A stretch of 62,906 bases of DNA, counting the filler, from Platydemus manokwari (lineage: Eukaryota), in NCBI GenBank assembly GCA_037951405.1. It is 6 parts of 6 records of this genome, joined end to end, with 100 filler letters (N's around TTAATTAATTAA, not from the genome) between each part and the next. Parts side by side here need not be neighbours in the genome. Positions count along the whole stretch, not along the records: positions 9,218 to 23,233 come from JBBMOY011551411.1; 5 more parts are not named here. One strand, given 5' to 3'. Position numbers and translations under genes: made by a program. Each line of letters begins with the position of its first letter. Position 1 is the stretch's first letter. Of the stretch, positions 9,218-23,233 are shown piece after piece. The notes under the pieces were generated by a model that had not been told where the DNA came from, searched no databases, and was given only the letters and a program-made list of their open reading frames with translations.

Positions 9218-9326
9218 AGAAGGAATATTTGTTTAAATAATATTTAATATGAAAATATATTTTTTTATACTTAGTTATGAGTTGTGAATATAATTTAAAA
9301 AGCGATGAAGTGTTAGCCACTAACAG

Positions 9327-10099
9327 ATCTGAAAGTTATAGCTGAAACGTTTGAAAAAAATTACCAGCCTATTTATTATTTGGTCAATAGAAAAAGTAAG
9401 ATTTTAGAAAACGCTTTTAACAAATGTGATCTGATATCACCGGAAGAAATGAAAAGGTTAGAAAATATTCAAAATGGAAACCAAAATGTCTTCCAAAAGA
9501 AAACACGTATTTCCGACGAGACTAAATTGAAAGCTCTTGAAATGTATCAAAAGGGTATCTCATTGCAAGCGATTGCAGATAATTTTCAAACTTCTTATAC
9601 CAACGTTTGGTATTGGGTAAAACATTAAACTAATTTATTTGAAAAAGTGTCTAAAAATAATGATCAGATCACACTGGAAGAATTGAAAAGATTAGAAAAT
9701 GTTGTTAATGGAAACAGGCTTGACTTACCAACGAAAAGGTACAAAGTCTCCACCGATAATAAATTGAATTTCATTGAAATGGATGGATTAGCTCTCCAAG
9801 CAAAAGCGTCTTTTAAAAGCGTTGTCAAGAATGATTATAATTTCTTAGAAAATGGCATAAAGCACAATGATCAGATATCATTAAAGGATGGATCTGAATG
9901 TTTCGATTTGTCTGTAAATTTTATTAAATATGAAAGTGTATTGTTTGATGAACAGATAACAATAAACGAAAATGAAATGCAAGGATATTTTAATAGAAAA
10001 GAAAATACAAAAAGGAAGATAATGGACGCTGAAAATACAGATGAATTCAAGAAAATACGACTTGAATTTCCTATAAATATTAAATTGGAAGAAAAGTAA
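9327..10099 (+). pseudogene. Tandem-HTH array gene, paralog A (5'-truncated, in-frame TAA)
   Basis: ORFs 9380-9628 and 9647-10099 are in one frame, separated by a single TAA (9626-9628; AGA in paralog B). Reads DLKVIAETFEKNYQPIYYLVNRKSKILEN... then TRISDETKLKALEMYQKGISLQAIADNFQTSYTNVWYW, and ends ...KKIRLEFPINIKLEEK like paralog B. Confidence 0.85.
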
Positions 10100-11810
10100 T
10101 TGCAATGCTCTAATAGAGTATTGATATTTGGTAAATTACTTTAATTGTGTCACTTTAATCGAAATATTTAACTTAATTTGATAAATTTTAACTTATTCAC
10201 TGTGTTATTTAAGTTATTATGAAAGCTTTGATTTGAAAATAGAATGTTATACTTCACCAATGTTATTCGAAAGATTCTTAGTTATAAATACATTATTAAA
10301 TCATTTCAACGAAATTGAAATATAATTTTCATCTCTAAAATAGTTTTAGTATTTGAAAGAAAACATGAAATATTCAACATATATAAATTTACCGTTAAAC
10401 TTTAGAAAGAATGTCTTTTGAATTAATTTCCCAATTATGTAATTTAAATTATATAATTTTTTTAGATTTAATGTAAAATTAATTTTATGTCATCACAAAT
10501 CTGAAAAAACTTTTCACTTTTACCATGTTAATTTTAAATGTTGATTAGGATTAAAAAGAAACAGAAAAATAATAAATATTATAAAATATGTCAAAGTATA
10601 TTTTGTCAGGGGGATTTTCAATTCTTATCCGAATAATTCTACATGATTTTTGATTTTTTATATATAAAAATTTTTATTATAAACTCTTTACTTGTTTAAA
10701 AATCTTGTAATAATAATCGTATTTTAAATCTTTAATAACACAAACATTTACAATACTTTGTTTTTGAAAAATATTTGCAAAAAATTAGAGTATTTTTTAA
10801 TTTTCTACGAATAACAAAAGATATTTGATAAAAATGCATTACAGTTTATCAAATAATTGAGTTCTTATATATTTAATATTTTAAAAATTCCAGATTGAGT
10901 TTATTTTTCGACCACTATAATTCCTAAAACATTTTTTATCTGTTGATAGAACAAAGATTTTAAAATCGAGTATTGTGTTGATATTTATCATTAATTATTT
11001 GAGATAAAAGAATACTAAGATTTATTAAATTGGTTGCACAAAAAACATAGATGACAATAATTTTAAGTGTAAATGATGTTGTTTTAAAATCCTGATTTTT
11101 TTCAATTTCAATATTTTATTATTTTCAATTATGTAATTTTTAACGAATTATCAAAAGAGATTGTTTAAATAAATCAATAATTTAAAACCCTTTTCAAACA
11201 TAGGATTTTAACACTTTAGATGGATTTGCTTTGAAATATTTGATTCAATTTTCGAGCAACTGATTTGATAACAATACTCGGAATAGATTTTGAATTAATT
11301 TCGCGAGCCATGGTAAAAAACTCGATCTTCACTATTTCTTAAATGTATTGTTTCTGTTTAAATCTTGATTAATAAACTGTATTTGTATAACAACAAACGT
11401 CGTTGTATTGATTTGTGTATATTTTCTGAAAATATATAAAAAATCTCAATAAGTTCATCTCCTGTTCTAGTTAACTTTGAATAAAGGTCAGTATTTAAAG
11501 AATATTTAGAAATTTCACGAAATTCTTCGTCAGGCATTATTATTCAAACCATTAAAATAGTATCTCATGTAGATAAGGATGTACTTTGGATGAATTGATA
11601 TGTGACTTCTTTCTGATAGTACTGATATAAGTTATTTAGTTTTTAATGTTCCCTTGAAAAATTTAAGATATCTCGACACAAATTTCCTCTAAGCATCCAA
11701 TCTGTGAGGCCTTCCCGTTTTGTTATCTTGATTCCATACAATTTTGCCAATTCCTTCAAGAATCGTGAAATCCCATGTTGATGAAACGTTCCCGCCATTA
11801 TGAAATCCCA
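10100..11810. repeat. Downstream flank of paralog A, duplicated as 14082-14900 + 16067-16240 + 16831-16977
   Basis: Colinear matches, e.g. GTAATTGCAATG after both stop codons, CATGGTxAAAxACTCGATCTT at ~11308 and ~14881, GAATATTTAGAAATTTCACGAAATTCTTCGTCAGG at ~11500 and ~16073, and CCATACAATTTTGCCAATTCCTTCAAGAATCGTG at ~11734 and ~16905. Confidence 0.9.
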
Positions 11811-12353
11811 TGTGTTATTAAACATAACTGTAATTATCTAACTACATTTATAATTATAAAGAAATAAATTTAAAAACTCAAATAATTATATACGATTGCC
11901 GTGATTAGAATAGGAACTTGGTTTTGAAGCTATTTTGTCACTATTAGATATCTTAAAAAGGATACTTTTATAGAATTAAAGAATAAATCAAACATAGCAA
12001 TTGTATACATGAATTTATTTTATAAAATTGTCTCATGCACGAAATTTCATTATAACAAAAATCCTTTTTCTTGACTTAAGCCGTAAATTCTTATTCTAAA
12101 AGATTTTAAAAATAAATCGTTTGAAAACTTTTACAAAATAATAATATTAATAGTTAAAAATTAAAGGCAGTTTTAAAGACATTGAAGATTTTTTAAAATA
12201 ATATTGTTCTAAATCATTCTGACGTTATTTTATTAATATTTCTCTATTTATATTTAAAAATAATTTAGACCAATAGTATTATAAAGAAAAGAAATTCTTT
12301 TATTTATTGTTTTTTTTTAAATTGATAATTAATCGTATTATAAAAAGCATATC

Positions 12354-14081
12354 ATGCAAAATATATCAATGGAACATAATAGAGAATCAATTGACATTTA
12401 TAATGAAAAAATTAAGCTAAGCGAGACACGAAATAAATTCGAAACATCTTCTCAGCACATTATGTATTTAGTCAATAATGAAATTAAAGTGTCTGACGAA
12501 ACTGAACAAATAATGACAGAAGAAAATATTGTAAATCAAAATAAAGAAACTGCGCAAAATAAAAGAATTATTTATTCTTATAAAACTAAATTGAAAGCCA
12601 TTGAAATGTATCAAGAAGGATTTACGTTGCACGAAATTGCGAATAAATTTAAAACATCTTTCAATAATGTCTGGTATTGGGTAAATACTAAAAATAAGAT
12701 ATTAGAAAACGCGTTTAATAAATGTAATCAGTTATCATCAGAAGAAATAAAAAAGTTAGAAAATATTAAAAATGAAAAGGTAGATGTCTTACAAAGGAAA
12801 ACACGTATTTCTACCGAGACTAAATTGAAAGCTATTGAAATGTTTCAAAAAGGAATTGATCTTAAAGTTATAGCCGAAACGTTAAAAACAGGTTACAAGC
12901 AAATTTATTATTTAGTCCATAGAGAAAGTAAGATATTAGAAAACGCGTTTAAGAAATGTGATCAGTTATCACCAGAAGAAATGAAAAGGTTAGAAAATAT
13001 TAAAAATGGAAACCGAGATGTCTTCCAAAAAAAACCACGTATTTCCGCCGAGACTAAATTGAAAGCTATTAAAATGTATCAAGAGGGTATCTCATTGAAA
13101 GCGATTGGAAATATTTTGCAAGTCTCCTTCAACCAAGTTAGGTATTTGGTCAATAATAAAAATAAAATATTAGAAAAATTTCTTAAAAGAAGAGATCAGA
13201 TATCACCGGACGAAATGAAAAGGTTAGAAAATATTAAAAATGAAAACCAAAATGTCTTCCAAAAGAAAACACGTATTTCTGACGAGACTAAATTGAAAGC
13301 TGTTGAAATGTATCAAGAAGGATTTACGTTGCAAGAAGTTGCTAATAAATTTGAAACGTCTTACAACTATGTCTGGTGTTGGGTCAATAATAAAAATAAG
13401 ATTTTAGAAAATTTTGTTAAAAGCAGTGATCAGATATCACTGGACGAAATGAAAAGGTTAGAAAATATTAAAAATGGAAACCAAAATCTCTCCCAAAAGA
13501 AAACACGTATTTCTGACGAGACTAAATTGAAAGCTGTTGAAATGTTTCAAGAGGGTATCTCATTGAAAGCGATTGCAGATAATTTTCAAACATCCTTCAA
13601 CCACGTTTGGTATTGGGTAGAAAACAGAAGTAAAATATTTGAAAAAGTTGCTAAAAATAATGATCAGATCTCACTTGAAGAATTGAAAAGATTAGAAAAT
13701 GTTGTAAATGGAAACAGGCGTGAGTTACAAACGAAAAAGTGCAAAGTCTCTACAGATAATAAATTTAATTTTATTGAAATGGATGGATTAGCTTACCAAT
13801 CAAAACCCTGTCAGACAGATTATAAATTATTAGAAAAAGACATAAAACACAATGATCAGATATCATTAAAGGATGGATCAGAAAGTTTCGATTTACCTGT
13901 AAATTTATTGAAATATGAAAGTGTATGGTTTGATGAAATGTTAGTACAAAAGGAAAATGAAACGAAAGGAAATTGTAATAGAAAAAATACTAAGAGAAAA
14001 ATAACTGACACTGAAAATAAAAATGAATTCAAGAAAATACGACTTGAATTTCCTATAAATATAAAATTGGAAGAAATGTAA
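12354..14081 (+). CDS. Intronless 575-aa protein with five tandem 78-aa repeats, each containing a CENP-B-N/psq-like helix-turn-helix (paralog B, intact)
   Basis: Open 1728-bp frame in AT-rich DNA. Repeat starts at 12801, 13035, 13269 and 13503 (period 234 bp), plus one upstream copy. The motif (Y/I)SxETKLKAIEMYQEGxxLxxIAxxFxTSxxxVxxWVxNKxKI resembles the N-terminal HTH of pogo/Tigger/CENP-B proteins. No DDE domain is visible. Confidence 0.9.
   Translation: MQNISMEHNRESIDIYNEKIKLSETRNKFETSSQHIMYLVNNEIKVSDETEQIMTEENIVNQNKETAQNKRIIYSYKTKLKAIEMYQEGFTLHEIANKFKTSFNNVWYWVNTKNKILENAFNKCNQLSSEEIKKLENIKNEKVDVLQRKTRISTETKLKAIEMFQKGIDLKVIAETLKTGYKQIYYLVHRESKILENAFKKCDQLSPEEMKRLENIKNGNRDVFQKKPRISAETKLKAIKMYQEGISLKAIGNILQVSFNQVRYLVNNKNKILEKFLKRRDQISPDEMKRLENIKNENQNVFQKKTRISDETKLKAVEMYQEGFTLQEVANKFETSYNYVWCWVNNKNKILENFVKSSDQISLDEMKRLENIKNGNQNLSQKKTRISDETKLKAVEMFQEGISLKAIADNFQTSFNHVWYWVENRSKIFEKVAKNNDQISLEELKRLENVVNGNRRELQTKKCKVSTDNKFNFIEMDGLAYQSKPCQTDYKLLEKDIKHNDQISLKDGSESFDLPVNLLKYESVWFDEMLVQKENETKGNCNRKNTKRKITDTENKNEFKKIRLEFPINIKLEEM
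12567..13736 (+). repeat. Five tandem 234-bp coding repeats
   Basis: Blocks such as GAGACTAAATTGAAAGCT and GAAAAGGTTAGAAAATATTAAAAATG recur at an exact 234-bp period. Confidence 0.95.
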
Positions 14082-17036
14082 TTGCAATGTTCCAATAGAT
14101 CATTGATATTTGCTAAATTACTTTAATTATGTCACTTCAATCGGAATATTTAAATATAGTTTAGAATAATGTCTTTTGGATATTATAAAATATTATAAAA
14201 TATTTGTTATTATCTCAAATATACGAAAAAATATGTCAAAGTAGATTTTATAAACAAATTCTCAATTCATATCAAAATAATTCTACATGATTTTTGATTT
14301 TGCAAATATAAAATCTTTAATTATAAATAAAGTTTGTAAACTCATTACATGTTTAATAATTTTCTTAAATGTTTAATAACAAAAAAATTAACAATGACTT
14401 TTTTTTAAAAATGATTTCAAATCTTTACAGTATTTTCCAGTTTTCCTCAAATAAAATAAGATGTTTGGATAAATTACATTTTGACTTACATTTATCCATT
14501 TATCAAATATTGAAGTTCTTGTGTATTTAATATTTTATTTCTTACAAATAAGAGATACAAAACTTTATTTTAAAAATTCAAGGTTGAGTTTATTTTGTGA
14601 CCACTACAAATTTTTAATAAGGACAATATTTTTAAAATCGAGTATTGTGTTGATATTTATCATAAATAATTCGAGATAAAAGAATTTTTATAACTTCGAT
14701 ATTTTCAATTATATAATTTTTAACGGATCATCAAATAAGATTGTTTAAATAAAGCGATAATTTAAAACCTGAATTATTCAAAACACTGAATTTTAACATT
14801 TGATTCGATTTTCGAGCAGCAGATCCTAGCTTCAATTCCTTTGATAACATTAACCTCAATAGATGTAGAATTAAACGGGTCATGGTGAAACACTCGATCT
14901 TGATTGTGTTAGCTATTAGTAAAGAACGGATTCAATAAAAAAAACTAACAATTCCAACATGAAAATGTTTTTTTTAAGAAATAAGAGAAAGACGAAATCA
15001 ATTGATGTTTTTGTTGTTTCTCTCATGAAAACCCTCCACAACTACTACTACGACTATATTAATGGTAATTGTAAAATTAAAGTTAGATCCAATTCATCCG
15101 TGACCTTTCACTTTTGGACTCTGAAGGTATTTTCTAACTCACTTTTTTAATCTTGCTTTTGAACATTCAAAATATACTCGACATTTGTCCATTTCTTTTG
15201 CTTGGCTTGACAATCCAAAACCTTTTCCAAATGTCGCACATAAATATCTGTAGTGTCTGCTGCGTTTGTAATTGAAATTTTTTCAGTACTTATTTTCTCA
15301 ATAGAAATTAAGGTTCTAGATGATATTTTCTTTGATTGCCAATAATACTCCTGATCTTCAAAAATTTATCGATAAAGTTGTTGAAATAACGGAATGGGCT
15401 AGTTTACAATAGTGTCCAAACAAATTTGATTTATCACACAAAACCATAATGATGTAATATCTATTAATAATGTAAATATTAAAAGATTGTTGAATAAAGA
15501 ATTTCACATGTATCCTGGTGTCCTTGTTAGTGATAAAAATGATCTCGTGAATTTTAAATTTAATTTTGTATTAGCGGCGGTAAATATCATATTTTTTACG
15601 TAAAAATACTTAAAATCTTTCAAAATTTCAAAGAAAGAAATTTCATAAACTAATCCATCAAATAATGTAAAAAAATGCAATATTTATATTTTACGAAGTA
15701 CGAGTATCTATCAAAGTGCAAATATCACGAATTATTATCAATTTAATTGTTCTAGTAATCTTATTTTGAACCCTATATCTTGTTCTGTTATTAAATTGAC
15801 ATGCCTCTTGAATTTTCAAAAAACTTAACAACGTAAATTATTTTATATAAATAGCAATATCAAGTTGACAGCTTTTTTAGTCAATAAGTTGATTAGATAT
15901 TAAGAGAAAAGGAATATTTTAAATACATCTTTGCAAAATATAGTTGAAAAATATTAAATAACTTTTTGAAAAATTTGTTTTTTTAAACGAATCGTAAGGA
16001 AAAGATGTAATAAAGTTTTATTAAAGCAAAATTATAATACAATGAATGAGTAATAATAATTCAGAGTTTAAAGAATATTTAGAAATTTCACGAAATTCTT
16101 CGTCAGGAATATCATTATTAATCAAACCGCAAAAATAGTATTTAAAGTAGATAATGATGTACTTTGGATGAATTGATATGTAACTTCTTTTTGATAGTAC
16201 TGGTATAAGTTATTTAGTTTTTAATGTTCTCTTGCAAAAGGTAATGATTATATTTCATTGAAATTAAGAAAGTTATTAATTTTGTAAAGATCACATAATA
16301 AATTACAATTTTTGATTAAATTATTTATTAATAACTTATCTTCAGACATAATATTATCAAGTTATGTTTCAATATTTCAATATTTATTGTACTTCAGAAT
16401 ATTTGAAGGGTCTTTATTTGTAATTTTGCTTTTGTGTAATATATATAATATCATAACAGTATATTTTTATAAATTCTATAATATGACCAGAGAGTCGAGC
16501 TTACATTATTACCCAACAATTACATTTTAGTGTTATAAAATAAAATTTAAAATAAAATCCAATGAAACCGTGCAATCTGGTATGTCACTATGGGTTTATT
16601 TCAATACAAACACGCACTACCGAAACCTGATGCGTACAAACCTGTTAAAAGACTCACATTACTTTGTTATTAGTCACCAATCGATGTTATCAATCAAAAT
16701 AGAATCGGGAATAATAAAGATTTGAATAATTTGCACTTATTATATTTAACTATCTCAAGAATAGTGGCATTATTGTAATACCTATTTAAACAAATCTCAA
16801 ACTAAATTATTACTTGAAATTATGTTTATGAATTTAAGATATCTCGACACAAATTTTCTCTAAGTATCCAATCTGAGAGGCCCTCCTGTTTTGTTATCTC
16901 GATCCCATACAATTTTGCCAATTCCTTCAAGAATCGTGTAATCCCATGTTGATAAAACGTTCACGCCATTATGAAATAATCAGGAAAGCAAAACCGAAAT
17001 CGCTATTAGCGACCATTTCGAATTTTGGTAGAATAA

Positions 17037-17730
17037 TCATATACTACTATTCATATACGTAACCATAACCATGATGGTCAAATATGTCTTATATCCTTTG
17101 CCAATTTTAATTTTATACTTGAAAATTCTCACTCTATCTAGAACTTTATATTTTGAGTTATTATTTAAATCATTATTAATATTATTCCATCCCTTTATTT
17201 TTTCTTTTATTATTTCATGGTTTTTGCTTGCGTCTACAGGAGTAACCCCAATATTTGAATGAATTTTATTATTATATTTTTTTAACAACACTTTGCAATA
17301 AATTATAATTCCATTTTGATTTCTCTCAACCGTAAAATGTTTCCACAAAATATTTTTTAAAGTTCTAATAAATATTTCTGCAAAAACAAAGTGAGTCATT
17401 TAAAAAAATAATTATATTCTTTATATTTAATATTATTTTGTTTAAATATTGTTGTCGGAATGAGATATTGCGATACCAGTTTAACCGAAATATTCTTGGA
17501 AATATGTTAATGTAATGAATGTAATACATAGTAATACATTTCTATGTTGATATTGACATTGTTTTAGTTGTCATAGTTTTAATTAAATTAAATACTAGTG
17601 CTCCAGAATATTCAAAATTAAGTTTGAATATATTCGTTTCACATTAACCAATAAAATTATTACGAATAAAATTAATTCTACATCACGAATTATTTGAACT
17701 ATTTTAATTGTTTCAGGCTCATGTAAATGT
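17037..17730 (-). mobile_element. Polinton/Maverick retroviral-type integrase relic
   Basis: AEIFIRTLKNILWKHFT...YNNKIHSNIGVTP...KYKVLDRVRIFKYKIKIGKGY matches the Maverick integrase C-terminal pattern (AERFNRTLK...YNN..HSSI..TP...KFKVGD.VRISK.K..F.KGY). The upstream part is decayed (LHEP near 17725). Confidence 0.85.
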
Positions 17731-19099
17731 GACTAACTAACAATTGTTAATGCTTGATAAGTTATAAGTAATATCAAGCTCATCAAATTATTTTGCTAAT
17801 TAAATCCATCATATGAATAACAATTCTTAGCCTAATCATAATCTTCGATCATTTAGAGATTCGATTTGCCTGAAAAAAGTAGTCACTGGGTAATAAAAAT
17901 ATCGAACAGAGAATCTAGGAACCAGTTTGAGAATTTTTATTGAAGTGAATTTTATGAATTGAACATAATATGAAATTGAAAATGAAATTTATTAAACAAT
18001 TAAATTGATAACCTCTTAAAATTGGATTTTAAATTTTCAGATTTCATTCAATAAATATGGTGTTAGCGCACACTTTAAAAATCTCAAAGATTCGAATTGA
18101 AATTATTCAACATGTTTTCCTAATAATAACATCACATAAACTTATGGATTATTATTTTATTAAAGAATATAATTAAATAAACTGTTTATAATTTTACGAC
18201 AATTTAAAACTATCATTTGGGACCTATTTTTGGCTAAATTTTGGACCAATTCTTCTAAATAAATTTATAATAAAAATATAAATTAAACGATAAATTCTTA
18301 TTGACTGTTTAATAAAACAATCAGTGATTAAATAAAATAACAATAATAATAACAATTATTACCTCAGATGAAGTTCACTGTATTGTAAGTTCATTGTTTT
18401 GATATTTTGTGCGGCTCATTAATTGTGGGTTTTTTAAGATATTTTCTGTTGAACAATTCAAAGAGACAGAATTCTTTATTTTGCAAAATATTCAGATTAA
18501 ACAATAATTATAATTCATTTAGTAAATAAAAATAGTTTCAATTAAATTTTAATAACTATTTAAATATTAATTTTACGTTACAAATAAATGTTTCAAATAA
18601 AATAGCTCATTTTCCGATTTTTGTTGAGAAATTTTAATTTTATTTTGTTAAAATACTGTTGGGATAAACATCAGCATTATATAGTATAAAAAACAAACAT
18701 TATATAGTATAAAATACAACAACATTATATTAAAAATGAGGATAATACTCCATTATTATAATAGTCCATTATTTGAAAATAATTAACAATTAAATAATAT
18801 ACCATGTTCTATTATTAGATTAACAAAATAGTTATTCTAAAAATACAATGATAAAAAATTAGGATTTAAAATGGCAATAAATAAATAAATAAATGGAATC
18901 ACTGAAATTTGAAGATAAAAAGGGCAAAAAATAAATAAATGGAAAATTAATTTGAAAATAGAAATAAAAAACAACAAAAATAAACCACGAAAAATAAATT
19001 AATAAAAGAAAAAGTTTTAAAGCAAGTAAAAATTGAAAGAAACACAATTTTTCTAATATACTATACAACGAATCTTTCAAATCCAAACGAAATTAAGAA

Positions 19100-19476
19100 A
19101 ACTCTAATTAAGAGGAAATCGATCATTATTGTCAAAAATTAAGCATTATTGTCAAACTATTATCTTGGAATCAACAATTTTGCGAATCGTATGAATTCCC
19201 AAAAGGATAATTACCATTATTGACGATTATCTACAATTGACGGAGGAAATAAATTATTTCAGTCTCTGTGAACAATCCATTAGTCACGAAGAAGATAAAA
19301 TATCTATAAATTATCTAATTTCATATCTAAGTTCAAGCAATAAAACTGGTATAAAAACACAAAGGAACAGAAGAAGAAGAGAAAAACTATATAACTCTGA
19401 ATTGTTTGTTCAACTCCTCACATTGGCATCTCCAATACTAATTCTATTCGACAAAATCAAGAATACTGCTTTCTGA
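19100..19476 (+). mobile_element. Probable decayed Polinton small basic (core/pX-like) protein
   Basis: FCESYEFPKG*LPL followed (across frameshifts) by a basic stretch and LFVQLLTLASPILILF. This resembles, from memory, the ICEC..N.LKGN.PL...GGFL..LL..PIL small protein of Mavericks/adintoviruses, and it lies between the integrase and pPolB relics. Confidence 0.4.
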
Positions 19477-20467
19477 AAACTTAAGGAAAAACGGGAAAAT
19501 AGTAAGCCTTATTATACAGTAATACTTTTCTTGTTGAGAAATATTTTATTGTTCAAAAATCTTTTATAAATTAACCATATTCTTTAACTTGAATACGTAT
19601 CATTTTAATCTATGATAAACATTATTGCATATTTAATATCAGTGAATTTGTCTACTATTTGAGTTAAATTACGTAATGTCATTTATAGCTGAATTGATAA
19701 AATCAATAAACACATTATTTCTCATAAGCTTGTGCTATAGAAATGTTCGGTTGGATACTAATGCAGCTTGCTCAAAATTATAATTCCTCTATAAGTACAT
19801 TTCTATATAGCTTATTAGGTTTATCGACGTACAAATTTTATAAAGCCTTAATTTAAAGTTACTTAGAAAGAGTAATCATTTATAAAATCAAAGCTATAAA
19901 CAACTGTATACAGGTATCATTTGCGTTAGTATAATCGACACGTTTTGAACAGCTTAATTCTTAAAATGGTTTGAATTGTTATCTTTTAAAAATGTCATTT
20001 TGAAGAAACGTGATTTTGTAAAAATCTTTCTATAAAAGAGTCTTTGACAACAGCATGTCAGTAAAAGAGGATTTTATCTATATTTTAATTACCAAAACAA
20101 TAATACTAAATGTCACAAAATTGATAATCATTTATTTTGAAATTAGATACCGAACACTCACTATTATTGATTATGATAATGTGTATATGAATCAACTCTT
20201 TCGTTTATAATTATAATTTACCTGATTTCTACTTTAATAATACAATCACAATGAAAAAATTGAATTTCAGTTGATAGAAGATATCAAATAAAAAAATTAG
20301 AACGAGTACCAACATTTTTAAATATTCCTATATTTCTACAAAATAATCAATTATTAGTAACTCGTATTTCGACAGATAAAAATTAAGAAACAACAGAATA
20401 GAAAATTAAGAAAAAAATAAAAACAGGAAAATCACAAAACCAAAATATGAAAACCCTATTAAAAAAA

Positions 20468-21950
20468 ACTTATAAATGCCAAATTTTCGATACGATGTTT
20501 AAAGTGATTCATGCTCTAAAAGTTCATGAAAAATCCAAAAAACATATTGCGAAATATAACGCTTTTATTAATATTTAAAACAATAATAAAACAATAGATA
20601 ACAGCAATACAATTAATGAAATTTCGTTTTCATCAAATATGGGTAATACTTATAAAACCCATAAAATTAAAATAAAAATCTCAACCAACTCAGAAAGATA
20701 ATTTATCATATTTCAGAAGAGTTTAAGGAAATATTAAAATTTCTTAATAAATATCTAGAACATAAATTTCAAAAAATGATCAAAATATTATTACAAAAAA
20801 TAAATCCACATACTGAAGAAATTTAATATACAACTATAAAATTATTTACAGATCATATATTAAAAATTGGATTGGAGAATATTATGGGTGACGACCTAGT
20901 AAATAATTTAAGATTTCTCCGAACACTGAGATAATGATTAAATGAGAGTTCAAGAAAGTGGATGGAGTATATTTGAATTATGTAATATAATAGTAAATAT
21001 TTCAAGTGTAAATGTTTTTTTAGAAGTAATTACTTACCCCTTACAGTTGTCTCTAATAACATAATAAATATGCAAAACTATGATAACAAATGTTTCTTTT
21101 TTTCAGTATTAGCCATTTTATATCCAATAAAAGGATACAGACGTGCAAATAGTGCAAGCCATTATAAAAAATATTTTGATAAATTAAATCTTGAACAAAT
21201 ATCTTTTCCAACACCTTTAAATGATATTAAAAAATTTCATAGAAAGAATAATGTTTATGGAATTAAAGTAAATGGAAATGGAAATAAGAATTACCAATTA
21301 TTTCCAATCTATATTTCCAAGAAAGAACAATATCCTCAAGATATTAAACTTTCATATTTAGAAAATAATGGAGTAACGCTCTATGCTTTCATTAAAAATT
21401 TCAATTGACTAATGCAGGGACAACTAACTTATAAATGAAATTCAAACCAAAGATTAAATTTTTGTGATAAATGTTGTTATTATTTTGTAACAGAAAATAA
21501 CTTTGAAAATCATTAGAGAATATTTAGAAAAAATGGTGAGGTAATCTCACGATTGTTAAGCCCAGCCAACATAATAATAAACGATGTTCGGTCTATGGCA
21601 ATATCTTAAAATGTATTAATTATAACCATCAAATACCAGTTTCTTTTATAATTATTGCTGATATAGAATGTGTGAATATCAAAAGGTAAAGCAACAAAGG
21701 TTTTAACTAATCAAATACTCATTTGAATTTATTTAAAATATATTTTAAGCTATTCAGAAATAATAGAAAACGAGAATAAATTATTTCAAGAAGAAAACTG
21801 CGTGCAAGAGTTTCTTAAATAGATAGAAGATAATGAAAATAAATTTGAAATTAATCTGAACGAACAAGACAAAATAAACTTTAATAATTCAACTAATTGT
21901 ACTGATTGTAATAAAATCTTTTCTGGTGATAAATAATGATTATTATTTAA
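20468..21950 (+). mobile_element. Polinton/Maverick protein-primed DNA polymerase B, N-terminal relic
   Basis: Degenerate C2H2 finger (YKCQIFD...HEKSKKH), VQESGWSI, NMQNYDNKCFFFSVLAILYP, LNLEQISFPTPLNDIKKF, FCDKC, PVSFIIIADIEC (exonuclease-I-like YADFE) and TNCTDCNKIF. Multiple stops and frameshifts. Confidence 0.85.
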
Positions 21951-21954
21951 AGAA

Positions 21955-22480
21955 AATAAGTTAGGAAATGTGTCGATGATACGAGTAAGATAATACAAAA
22001 AATGTCTAAAAGCAGTGAACAGATATGACCGGAACAAATGAAAGATTAGAAAATATTATTAACAAGCGAGATTTACGAAAAAGAAAATGTGAAGTTACTA
22101 AAGATAATAAATTTAAATCTATCGAAATGGATAGAGATGCGACGGCGTTGCAAGCCATTGCAGAAAAATCGAAATTTTCTTTCAAAACAATTTTTTAGGA
22201 AAATAGTAAATTATCAGAAATAGGTAATGATAATGAATATTTGTCTTTACTTGCAAATTTAATTTAAAAAGAAAATAAATTGTTTAATGAAACCAAACCA
22301 TTGGAATTGATTATTGATGAAATGGAAAGAAAATTGCTTGGAAAACCTATTTTATTAGCATTTAGTAACAATGCTAGAAAAGAAAATAAAAACAAGAAAA
22401 ATATATAGCATTGAAAATCTAAATGAATTGAAGGAAATACGACTTAAATTTTCTTTAAATTTAAAATTGGAGTTATTTAA
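21955..22480 (+). pseudogene. Tandem-HTH array gene, paralog C (decayed 3' part)
   Basis: VRKCVDDTSKIIQKMSKSSEQI*PEQMK/RLENIINKRDLRKRKCEVTKDNKFKSIEMD...ALQAIAEK and C-terminal ELKEIRLKFSLNLKLE are homologous to the last repeat and tail of paralog B; the 3' flank AATAGATCA is also shared. Confidence 0.8.
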
Positions 22481-23233
22481 TTACAATAATGCAATAGATC
22501 ACTAATTAATTTGTTGTTTTTCTAAAAATTTTAATCAGTTTTAATACAAATATTAATCTTTAATGCTTGAATAAAAGTTTTTTTCAAATTTTTTTTCCAA
22601 ATTTTAAATGCGAGATATCAACAGGAGTTTTATATAGAAATAGAATATATTTGATGATTTATAGATGTTTTTTTAAGAAAATGAAAGATTTTCGTCTATC
22701 GGATTGGAAATTCAAGCTTGGGTTGTAGCATACTATCAGAATATATGCTGTTAAGCTGAAGCATCACAACAATATGACTTTCTCATTGGATAACCTGTAT
22801 GACAAAGGCGTTTCAAACTGAAATTCTCTTTTAATTTATAAAAAAATACATAATTAAAATCTATGAAAATTCAATCAAATGGTGCAAGAGATTTTTCTGA
22901 AAATTGATGTGATGATTTGATGTTATCTTTAATAATTTTTATTTTACTCGATTAAGTAAGTCAAGTCAACTAAATCGAGTCAACTTACTGAAGACTTTTT
23001 ATTGCAGAATATGATGGTGAATGTAATTATTTCTCTAAAAATTGAAGAGAGTCGAAATGAAATGTACTTATTTGTAAAGTTCACCCAAATAATTTGAGTA
23101 GTTGTTGAAAGGCTATATTTTTTTCAACCATTTTTACAATTTTTATCAGTTTTATCTATAATAATACTTTTAATTTTTTATTTTTTAAAATAACATCTCT
23201 TTATTGTTTCATTAGATCTTTCTATTTTAAATT

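What the first reader, a model, noticed from the sequence alone, without database searches (positions are those of the whole stretch)
12354..14081. Candidate modular DNA reader: intronless protein made of five tandem 78-aa HTH modules
Seen in sequence: a clean 575-aa ORF with an exact 234-bp periodicity, five full modules and two degenerate half-modules (N-terminal NKFETSSQHIMYLVNN; C-terminal KVSTDNKFNFIEMD), with no introns although every host gene in the window is multi-exonic. Established: the module core resembles the CENP-B-N/psq HTH used by pogo/Tigger transposases to bind TIRs, and Pipsqueak proteins use tandem psq domains. Inference: a transposase-derived HTH has been freed from its catalytic domain and amplified with a fixed helical/basic linker into an array reading a long composite site. 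That would make it a lineage-specific analogue of C2H2-ZF or TALE arrays, possibly for transposon silencing or satellite/centromere binding. I do not recognise this architecture as a named family.
Basis: partly seen in the sequence, partly recalled or inferred. Interest (0 to 1): 0.9.

Follow-up and report, generated by a model that had tools for sequence, protein, structure and literature searches.

The report
Orphan family of tandem HTH-module proteins
The 575-residue gene is real and belongs to a previously undescribed, lineage-specific family of likely nuclear DNA-binding proteins built from 3-7 tandem 78-residue helix-turn-helix modules of the CENP-B/pogo type, a new variant of a known theme whose DNA targets and expression are still untested.

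Summary
Window 12354-14081 (+) is an intact 575-aa ORF with five gap-free 78-aa modules, flanked by a degenerate N-terminal module and a C-terminal half-module.

- **Not a transposon fragment:** there is no DDE domain and there are no TIRs. Paralogues share only about -150 to +100 nt around the ORF.
- **Conserved promoter:** that shared stretch includes a 23-nt CCAAT-box motif found almost only in this family.
- **Family:** the 911-Mb genome holds at least 23 paralogous frames with 2-7 modules. Module types are shuffled between them. All share a C-terminal tail with a bipartite NLS pattern. Three copies lie head to tail in this piece.
- **Selection:** scaffold residues are strongly constrained (pN/pS 0-0.2). 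Recognition-helix and arm positions evolve almost freely.
- **Public relatives:** only weak, unnamed metagenomic ones.

I read it as a lineage-specific multi-HTH DNA-binding protein family, a new variant of the Pipsqueak/CENP-B kind. Three-module modelling gave no confident fixed geometry between modules, unlike a TALE solenoid. Expression, targets and any TE-silencing or centromere role are untested.

The parts
12204..12353 (+). Conserved upstream unit (putative core promoter and 5' UTR) shared by paralogues that are only 35-50% identical in protein
   Evidence: Pairwise blastn among oriented loci: upstream homology ends at about -105 to -157 from the ATG in 10 paralogues. Multiple alignment.
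12259..12281 (+). 23-nt family-specific motif AATAATTTAGACCAATAGTATTA containing a CCAAT box, followed by a TATA-like TATAAAG
   Evidence: Conserved in all 10 aligned paralogues. Genome-wide, 18 places match with 2 mismatches or fewer, and at least 12 of them are on contigs carrying family members.
12354..14081 (+). Intact intronless ORF, 575 aa, including the stop codon
   Evidence: The start codon and the N-terminal MQNISMEHN motif are conserved across paralogues.
12354..12554 (+). N-terminal region, aa 1-67: a degenerate module conserved in the family
   Evidence: The module HMM matches it over positions 6-76 at 21.6 bits. N-terminal alignment.
12555..12788 (+). Module 1 (aa 68-145), type A
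12789..13022 (+). Module 2 (aa 146-223), type B (GIDLKVIAE...YYLVHRESK)
13023..13256 (+). Module 3 (aa 224-301), type A
13257..13490 (+). Module 4 (aa 302-379), type A. This is the module that was modelled: helices at 9-20, 25-32 and 36-44 form the HTH, and 46-56 and 62-77 form the spacer.
13491..13724 (+). Module 5 (aa 380-457), type C, the terminal module type in the paralogues where it occurs last
13725..13979 (+). Degenerate half-module (KVSTDNKFNFIEMDG) followed by a conserved acidic/hydrophobic motif ESFDLPVNLLKYESVWFDE
13980..14045 (+). Bipartite NLS-like pattern RKNTKRKITDTENKNEFKKIRL (aa 543-564), conserved family-wide
   Evidence: C-terminal alignment of 14 paralogues. The pattern was recognised by eye, not tested.
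14061..14072 (+). Conserved C-terminal IKLE (aa 570-573), which fits the psi-K-x-E SUMO consensus
   Evidence: The SUMO reading is inference from a pattern.
14082..14180 (+). Conserved 3' flank (putative 3' UTR), including TAATTGCAATGTTCCAATAG
   Evidence: Downstream homology of 30-130 nt among paralogues.
9326..10099 (+). 3' part of a second family member. It is cut by the edge of the piece, has one in-frame TAA at 9626-9628, and is closest to the L012 copy (79% aa).
   Evidence: Its 3' flank is duplicated with that of the intact gene (repeat families D3, D5, D8-D11, D14, D15).
21960..22472 (+). Degenerate remnant of a third family member (L019-like C-terminal part)

Best explanation
The ORF is an intact member of a lineage-specific, partly tandemly clustered multigene family. 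The family most likely encodes nuclear, sequence-specific DNA-binding proteins.

Each 78-aa module is a short basic N-terminal arm, a three-helix HTH of the CENP-B_N/pogo/Brinker class, and two conserved spacer helices. Modules appear to be joined by flexible basic junctions, so the array would behave as beads on a string. Several HTH units would dock in successive major grooves and together read a long composite site. This step is inferred.

Specificity would be set mainly by the exposed start of helix 3 (module positions 36, 37, 38, 40, 44) and by the arm (positions 5, 6). These are the most variable positions, while the scaffold is strongly conserved. Arrays diversify by duplication, loss and reshuffling of module types.

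A conserved tail carries a bipartite NLS pattern and a psi-K-x-E motif. A conserved CCAAT/TATA-like promoter travels with every copy.

The HTH is homologous to the N-terminal HTH of pogo-type transposases, which are abundant in this genome. That makes an origin by capture of a transposase DNA-binding domain plausible but unproven.
For: **Shown**
- ORF and period.
- HTH identity: HTH_23 85.3 bits in 5 stretches and CENP-B_N 32.1 bits, above its cut-off. Of 51 single modules, 40 hit HTH_23 and 13 hit CENP-B_N.
- Link to pogo: hhalign of the module profile against this genome's pogo N-terminal HTH gives probability 95.1%, E 3e-8, over 51 columns. In the direct HMM comparison, pogo scores higher than Tc1/IS630-type HTHs.
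- Family: 89 matches in the genome. At least 23 distinct open frames have 2-7 modules, and at least 12 run complete from the conserved start to the conserved tail.
- Selection: pairwise dN/dS is 0.34-0.70. Per column, pN/pS is 0-0.2 at K12, L13, K14, M18, Y19, G22, E51, S61, L68, E69, N70 and N73. It is about 1.0-1.3 at positions 5, 6, 26, 38, 40, 54, 72 and 77. The highest entropies are at 36, 40, 6, 38, 72 and 5.
- Module types recombine: N-A-B-A-A-C here, against B-A-B-A-C, J-A-A-B-A and B-A-C in paralogues.
- Promoter motif conserved and family-specific.
- Tail with NLS pattern.
- Other members sit next to ordinary genes: a CDK11/PITSLRE kinase exon and an FkbM-like methyltransferase.

**Inferred**
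- DNA binding, nuclear location, composite-site reading, and the positions that set specificity.
Against: - No RNA evidence at all. The only public run holding the sequence is DNA contigs.
- No DNA-binding test and no known target.
- dN/dS between the closest copies is only about 0.65. Several copies carry stops, so part of the family is decaying.
- No position shows pN/pS clearly above 1, so diversifying selection is not demonstrated.
- Pfam HTH_psq gives no hit.
- The assembly is very fragmented (2 million contigs), so copy number, clustering and the intactness of many members are uncertain.
Confidence: 0.62

Rival explanations
1. The ORF is cargo of an uncharacterised mobile element, for example a non-autonomous DNA transposon or a larger element whose ends lie outside the contigs. 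On this view its copy number reflects transposition, not host gene duplication, and the protein serves the element, for instance by binding its ends.
For: - Multi-copy, with 89 matches on about 50 contigs, several carrying stops.
- The HTH type is that of transposases, and the genome is rich in pogo elements.
- The gene is flanked by two partial copies of an abundant MITE in inverted orientation.
- TE debris lies nearby.
Against: - The unit shared by diverged copies is only about -150 to +100 nt. It has no terminal inverted or long terminal repeats.
- The flanking MITE pieces are truncated asymmetrically and are absent from more distant paralogues.
- No DDE_1 hit falls on any contig carrying a family member.
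- Copies lie head to tail in this piece with duplicated intergenic sequence, as in segmental duplication.
- Divergence among copies is broad (33-90%), not burst-like.
- The neighbours of other members are ordinary host genes.
Confidence: 0.15
2. The modules keep an HTH-like fold but the protein does not read DNA. The repeat array would serve instead as a protein- or RNA-binding scaffold.
For: - The spacer helices (S61, E63, E64, R67, L68, E69, I71, N73) are as conserved as the HTH core. This suggests an interaction surface other than DNA.
- Best sequence hit in the PDB profile search is an entry named 'CAP REPEAT', 8vd6.
- No direct DNA-binding evidence.
Against: - Every module keeps the basic arm (QKK.R.S) and the conserved W/Y core of helix 3, as in the DNA-bound CENP-B and Brinker domains.
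- Variability is concentrated on the exposed face of the recognition helix.
- An NLS-like tail is present.
Confidence: 0.1
3. This copy is an untranscribed or recently dead relic, even though its frame is intact. The family would be an expanding and decaying set of duplicates without present function.
For: - The neighbouring copy carries a stop and the third is a remnant.
- dN/dS to the nearest paralogues is about 0.65.
- No RNA data.
Against: - A 575-codon open frame in 25% G+C DNA would not persist by chance.
- Scaffold positions are strongly constrained across 72 modules.
- The start codon, promoter motif and tail are conserved in paralogues as low as 35% identical.
- The nearest paralogues used for the 0.65 value appear truncated or broken themselves, which inflates the ratio.
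Confidence: 0.1

Closest known systems
Drosophila Pipsqueak (Psq) and the psq/CENP-B_N HTH superfamily (Dan, Danr, E93, Ribbon)
   Different: Pfam HTH_psq is not hit and there is no BTB domain. The unit is 78 aa with two extra conserved helices. Arrays have up to 7 units of different types. There is a family-specific N-terminus, an NLS tail and a promoter. No sequence relative is named in any database.
CENP-B and pogo/Tigger transposases
   Different: CENP-B and pogo have one CENP-B_N domain, a different second HTH (Tc5 type) and a DDE_1 domain. Here the first HTH alone is iterated, with no Tc5 HTH, no DDE_1 and no TIRs.
Lineage-specific expansions of TE-derived HTH-Psq/CENPB transcription factors in animals (PMC10027918)
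   Same: The evolutionary pattern matches: species-specific, partly tandem expansions of transposase-derived HTH factors without one-to-one orthologues.
   Different: That paper's text, as read, does not mention long fixed-period arrays. The present family has no detectable homologue among public proteins above 35% identity.
C2H2 zinc-finger arrays (KRAB-ZNF, ZAD-ZNF) and TALE repeats
   Same: Resemblance in logic only: tandem DNA-reading modules, variable module number, module shuffling, variability concentrated at putative contact residues, and clustered paralogues.
   Different: The fold is unrelated. The module is much larger (78 aa). Models show low-confidence junctions between modules (pTM 0.37), with no sign of a continuous superhelix. 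No recognition code is known.
Unnamed metagenomic tandem-HTH proteins (P0001, P0002, P0003, P0005, P0011; bacterial P0006, P0007, P0009)
   Same: P0001-P0005 share the KLKAIEMY-x-G helix-1 signature and the W-I/V-K/N-x-K motif in 4-6 tandem modules. They lie on A+T-rich contigs as lone intronless ORFs.
   Different: They are at most 35-40% identical, their period is about 60 aa with a shorter spacer, and they lack the conserved N-terminus, tail and promoter motif. The bacterial arrays are probably independent inventions.

Membership tests
Pfam HTH_23 / HTH clan (homeodomain-like transposase-type HTH) | Score above the curated gathering cut-off | tested here: met
   85.3 bits against a cut-off of 24.6, in five stretches. 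40 of 51 single modules match at E<=0.01.
CENP-B_N (PF04218) | Score above the gathering cut-off and the fold of CENP-B domain 1 | tested here: met
HTH_psq (PF05225) / Pipsqueak family | Match to the psq HTH model | tested here: not met
   HTH_psq is absent from the hits at E<=1 for the whole protein. It is also absent from the 25 families most often matched by single modules.
Pipsqueak/Tramtrack-group proteins | BTB/POZ domain N-terminal to the psq repeats (long isoforms) | tested here: not met
   No BTB hit in Pfam.
pogo/Tigger transposon | DDE_1 catalytic domain and a second HTH (HTH_Tnp_Tc5) in the same ORF | tested here: not met
   Neither family appears among the hits at E<=1. DDE_1 hits in the genome lie on other contigs.
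pogo/Tigger transposon | Terminal inverted repeats bounding the repeated unit | tested here: not met
   The shared unit runs from about -150 to about +100 nt with no inverted termini. The inverted MITE fragments at 11815-12082 and 14246-14551 are truncated asymmetrically and are not shared by distant paralogues.
TALE-like or solenoid DNA readers (analogy) | Repeats pack into one rigid superhelix with fixed register on DNA | tested here: inconclusive
   Three-module AF2 model: pLDDT is 85-90 within modules but below 50 at junctions 77-83 and 154-160, and pTM is 0.37. This suggests flexible joints, but the model was made without DNA.
Sequence-specific DNA-binding transcription or chromatin factor | Binds DNA, is nuclear, is expressed | not testable with these tools
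   Only indirect evidence: fold, basic arm, NLS-like pattern and promoter motif. No RNA run is available.

The most novel reading that the evidence does not exclude
The family is a new class of modular DNA readers. Each 78-aa five-helix module would recognise a short DNA word set by a handful of residues (helix-3 positions 36, 37, 38, 40, 44 and arm positions 5, 6). Arrays of 3-7 shuffled module types would then spell long composite sites. That would make it a natural HTH-based counterpart of zinc-finger arrays, evolving in an arms-race-like fashion, for example against the very abundant MITEs and pogo elements of this genome.
Probability: 0.15. Interest if true: 0.85.

Novelty: new variant of a known kind. 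Interest (0 to 1): 0.55.

Why it matters
Transposase HTH domains are a known source of new transcription factors, but almost always as one or two domains. This family iterates one such domain up to seven times with a fixed 78-residue unit. It reshuffles module types between paralogues, and it keeps the scaffold fixed while the likely DNA-contact positions vary.

If DNA binding is confirmed, the family would be a natural system for asking how multi-HTH arrays build long-site specificity, and whether they can be re-engineered. It would also be another independent case of the array-and-cluster mode of evolution known from KRAB zinc fingers.

For annotation, the practical point is that these intronless, A+T-rich ORFs are real genes. 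Homology-based pipelines will miss them, because public databases hold no named relative.

Tried and rejected
- **Word-indexed protein searches.** Both the full protein and a three-module profile returned nothing. The exhaustive representative search gave only 34 weak hits, the best at E 3e-30 and 35% identity, all unnamed.
- **ESM Atlas feature search.** The best score was 0.80, below the level that means anything.
- **PDB sequence search with the whole protein.** It gave only chance hits to snake-venom lectins at E about 0.4. These were rejected.
- **Expression.** The single run found is DNA contigs. It gave no information on transcription.
- **TIR hypothesis.** The DNA search suggested that 11815-11930 and 14246-14360 are inverted copies bounding the gene. 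Closer analysis showed both are truncated pieces of an independent 620-bp MITE with its own 25-bp TIRs. More distant paralogues do not share them. Rejected.
- **Tc1/IS630 origin of the HTH.** The module HMM scores lower on those than on pogo (4-9 bits against 16.7 bits). Not excluded.
- **Positive selection at contact residues.** The maximum pN/pS is about 1.3, so this is not demonstrated.
- **Promoter motif in the best metagenomic relative.** Absent.
- **Literature searches for tandem HTH arrays.** They found no description of this architecture.
- **Organism identity.** It could not be established with the tools.

Full report
**1. The observation**

The piece (window 9218-23233) is A+T-rich, with G+C between 18% and 30%. 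It holds one long ORF, 12354-14081 on the + strand, 575 aa.

Tandem Repeats Finder reports a 234-bp period over 12585-13715: 4.8 copies, 78% matches. It also reports a 468-bp super-period without indels. Cutting the protein every 78 residues from aa 68 puts five modules in exact register.

A module HMM also recognises the N-terminal 67 residues as a degenerate module, at 21.6 bits. The residues after module 5 (KVSTDNKFNFIEMDG) align with the arm and first helix of a sixth module.

**2. What a module is**

- **Sequence.** Pfam finds HTH_23 in five stretches (85.3 bits, E 1.7e-24). It also finds HTH_28, HTH_Tnp_1, HTH_7 and CENP-B_N (32.1 bits, cut-off 21.2). HTH_psq does not appear. Scanned singly, 40 of 51 modules from the family hit HTH_23, 28 hit HTH_28, 13 hit CENP-B_N and 2 hit BrkDBD.
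- **Single-module model.** An AlphaFold2 model of module 4, built with a 51-module alignment, has pLDDT 82.9. It shows helices at 9-20, 25-32 and 36-44 (the HTH) plus 46-56 and 62-77.

- **Three-module model.** A model of modules 3-5 keeps each five-helix unit at pLDDT 85-90. It has low-confidence junctions at 77-83 and 154-160, and pTM is 0.37. The models give no confident fixed geometry between modules, which fits flexible basic joints better than a rigid solenoid.

**3. Relation to transposases**

The genome is rich in pogo/Tigger elements: at least 150 DDE_1 matches, many in open frames of 450-600 aa. The module HMM aligns colinearly with their N-terminal HTH, covering the basic arm, three helices and the W-x-K-N-K-x-K-I motif.

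A profile-profile comparison gives probability 95.1%, E 3e-8, over 51 columns. Tc1/IS630-type HTHs from the same assembly score lower. The spacer, module positions 54-78, has no pogo counterpart.

The ORF contains no DDE_1 and no Tc5-type HTH. No DDE_1 hit lies on a contig that carries a family member.

**4. It is a family**

The protein has 89 matches in the 911-Mb, 2-million-contig assembly, at 26-86% identity apart from the self-match; most show no stops and some carry several. From the fetched loci I recovered at least 23 different open frames with 2-7 modules. At least 12 of them run from the conserved start (MQNISMEHN-like) to the conserved end.

The shared C-terminal tail has three conserved elements:
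- an acidic/hydrophobic motif (ESFDLPVNLLKYESV-FDE);
- a bipartite NLS-like pattern (KRKI-DTE--NEFKKRRL);
- a terminal IKLEE, which fits the psi-K-x-E SUMO consensus.

The last two readings are pattern recognition only.

Clustering 72 modules shows recurring types that are ordered differently in different paralogues. This gene reads N-A-B-A-A-C. Others read B-A-B-A-C, J-A-A-B-A and B-A-C. This indicates module duplication and loss by unequal exchange, and it agrees with the 468-bp super-period.

In this piece there are three family segments on the same strand:
- a 3' part cut by the contig edge, with one TAA (9326-10099);
- the intact gene;
- a remnant (21960-22472).

The intergenic sequence after the first two is duplicated as well.

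**5. Gene or transposon?**

Among paralogues that are only 35-50% identical in protein, DNA homology extends to about -105 to -157 upstream of the ATG. Downstream of the stop it extends 30-130 nt, then it ends. There are no inverted or long terminal repeats at these limits.

The upstream stretch contains a 23-nt motif, AATAATTTAGACCAATAGTATTT. It holds a CCAAT box followed by a TATA-like element and is conserved in all ten aligned paralogues. Genome-wide, 18 places match with two mismatches or fewer, and at least 12 are on family contigs. At three mismatches the count (72) is close to that of the reversed control (49). At synonymous distances of 0.7-1.2, neutral DNA would no longer align, so this element is under constraint.

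An apparent pair of inverted repeats around the gene (11815-11930 and 14246-14360) proved to be two truncated pieces of an independent MITE. That MITE is 620 bp long, has its own 25-bp TIRs and occurs in thousands of copies. Distant paralogues lack these pieces.

The neighbours of other members include a CDK11/PITSLRE kinase exon and an FkbM-like methyltransferase. I conclude that host gene duplication is much the better reading. A cargo role in some undefined element cannot be fully excluded with so fragmented an assembly.

**6. Selection**

Pairwise Nei-Gojobori dN/dS between this gene and 18 paralogues is 0.34-0.70. The higher values are against copies that look truncated or broken.

Summed over 213 module pairs, pN/pS is 0.55, but it is very uneven:
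- It is 0-0.2 at K12, L13, K14, M18, Y19, G22, E51, S61, L68, E69, N70 and N73.
- It is 1.0-1.3 at positions 5, 6, 26, 38, 40, 54, 72 and 77.

The highest entropies are at 36, 40, 6, 38, 72 and 5. Five of the twelve most variable columns lie in the nine-residue helix 3.

This is the pattern expected if a folded scaffold is kept while the exposed face of the recognition helix and the arm are free to change. It does not prove positive selection. The spacer helices are as conserved as the HTH core, so they have a role of their own: packing, contact with the next module, or a partner.

**7. Relatives elsewhere**

- The word-indexed search of 5.8 billion proteins found nothing, either with the protein or with a three-module profile.
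- The exhaustive search of 1.84 billion representatives found 34 hits, the best at E 3e-30 and 35% identity. None carries a name.
- Several hits (P0001, P0002, P0003, P0005, P0011) are themselves tandem arrays with the same KLKAIEMY-x-G signature. They have a period of about 60 aa and lie on A+T-rich metagenomic contigs as lone ORFs.
- Others are bacterial arrays that are probably convergent (P0006, P0007, P0009).

**8. Literature**

[quoted passage not shown] Pipsqueak's HTH region binds GAGA (PMC6754745). That it consists of four tandem repeats of about 50 aa is from my own knowledge of Lehmann et al. 1998 and Siegmund and Lehmann 2002. I found no description of 78-residue five-helix modules in arrays of up to seven.

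**9. Verdict**

The feature is real and the gene is very likely functional. It belongs to an orphan family best described as a new variant of the psq/CENP-B-type multi-HTH DNA-binding proteins.

The mechanism I propose is independent HTH modules on flexible basic joints, together reading a long composite site in the nucleus. It rests on fold, conservation pattern and sequence motifs, not on any binding or expression data. No RNA run was available.

Noticed in passing
window 11815-12082 (+) and 14246-14551 (-); full copies in L031:150-770 and L030-L039: A MITE-like interspersed repeat of about 620 bp with roughly 25-bp terminal inverted repeats (GGCTAAAGTTAAA-AAGGGTCC ... GGACCCTTTTTCTTAACTTAAGCC). 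Copies are 82-91% alike. Summed contig depth over its first 90 nt is about 79,000, against 20-50 for unique sequence, so there are thousands of copies. Two truncated pieces flank the gene in inverted orientation.
   Followed up: partly
window 11300-11825 (- strand ORFs 11643-11825 and 11358-11537); duplicated at 16061-16244 and 16800-16977: Coding-looking segments on the minus strand (MFNNTWDFIMAGTFHQHGISRFLKELAKLYGIK..., MPDEEFREISKYSL...) with 86-94% identical second copies 4.6-5.2 kb downstream and on other contigs (C1870633, C1158860). There is no Pfam match, so their nature is unknown.
   Followed up: partly
L057-L062 (G000 contigs C1435157, C1324140, C1233442, C1121996, C179586, C1868855): A second subfamily with the same HTH type. 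It has one or two modules, an N-rich low-complexity region and an unrelated conserved C-terminal helical domain (...EY--LK-IY--Y...YF--I--RY--LE-I). The metagenomic protein P0011 has the same C-terminus.
   Followed up: partly
L009 (C1809214) and L069 (C1220610): Some family members carry a second internal tandem repeat of about 20 aa (EISIKNELKIIEEPERICIPS, 6 or more copies) beside the HTH modules.
   Followed up: no
window 14095-14104 and 12268-12275: The heptamer CCAATAG occurs both in the conserved promoter motif and, in the same orientation, in the conserved stretch about 15 nt after the stop codon (TGCAATGTTCCAATAG). This could be coincidence or a shared binding site.
   Followed up: no
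L072, L075, L076 (C1220421, C1117142, C1790084): IS630- and IS66-like transposase ORFs of bacterial appearance are present in the assembly. This suggests bacterial contigs (a symbiont or contamination) among the 2 million contigs.
   Followed up: no
window 17037-17399 (-) and 21070-21408 (+): Two ORFs of 120 and 112 aa without Pfam hits. The first resembles, by eye only, the C-terminal part of a retroelement integrase. The second (MQNYDNKCFFFSVLAILYP...) is of unknown nature.
   Followed up: partly
L064:2-649 (-) (C826647): An exon of a CDK11/PITSLRE-type kinase (GFPITSLREVN) lies about 2.3 kb upstream of a family member, on the opposite strand. This shows the family sits among ordinary host genes.
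   Followed up: no
P0006, P0007, P0009 (public metagenomic proteins): Bacterial-looking proteins with 8-12 tandem HTH_23-type modules. One is G+C-rich, one has a signal-peptide-like start and one has N-terminal ankyrin repeats. Tandem HTH arrays seem to have arisen repeatedly and are undescribed.
   Followed up: no
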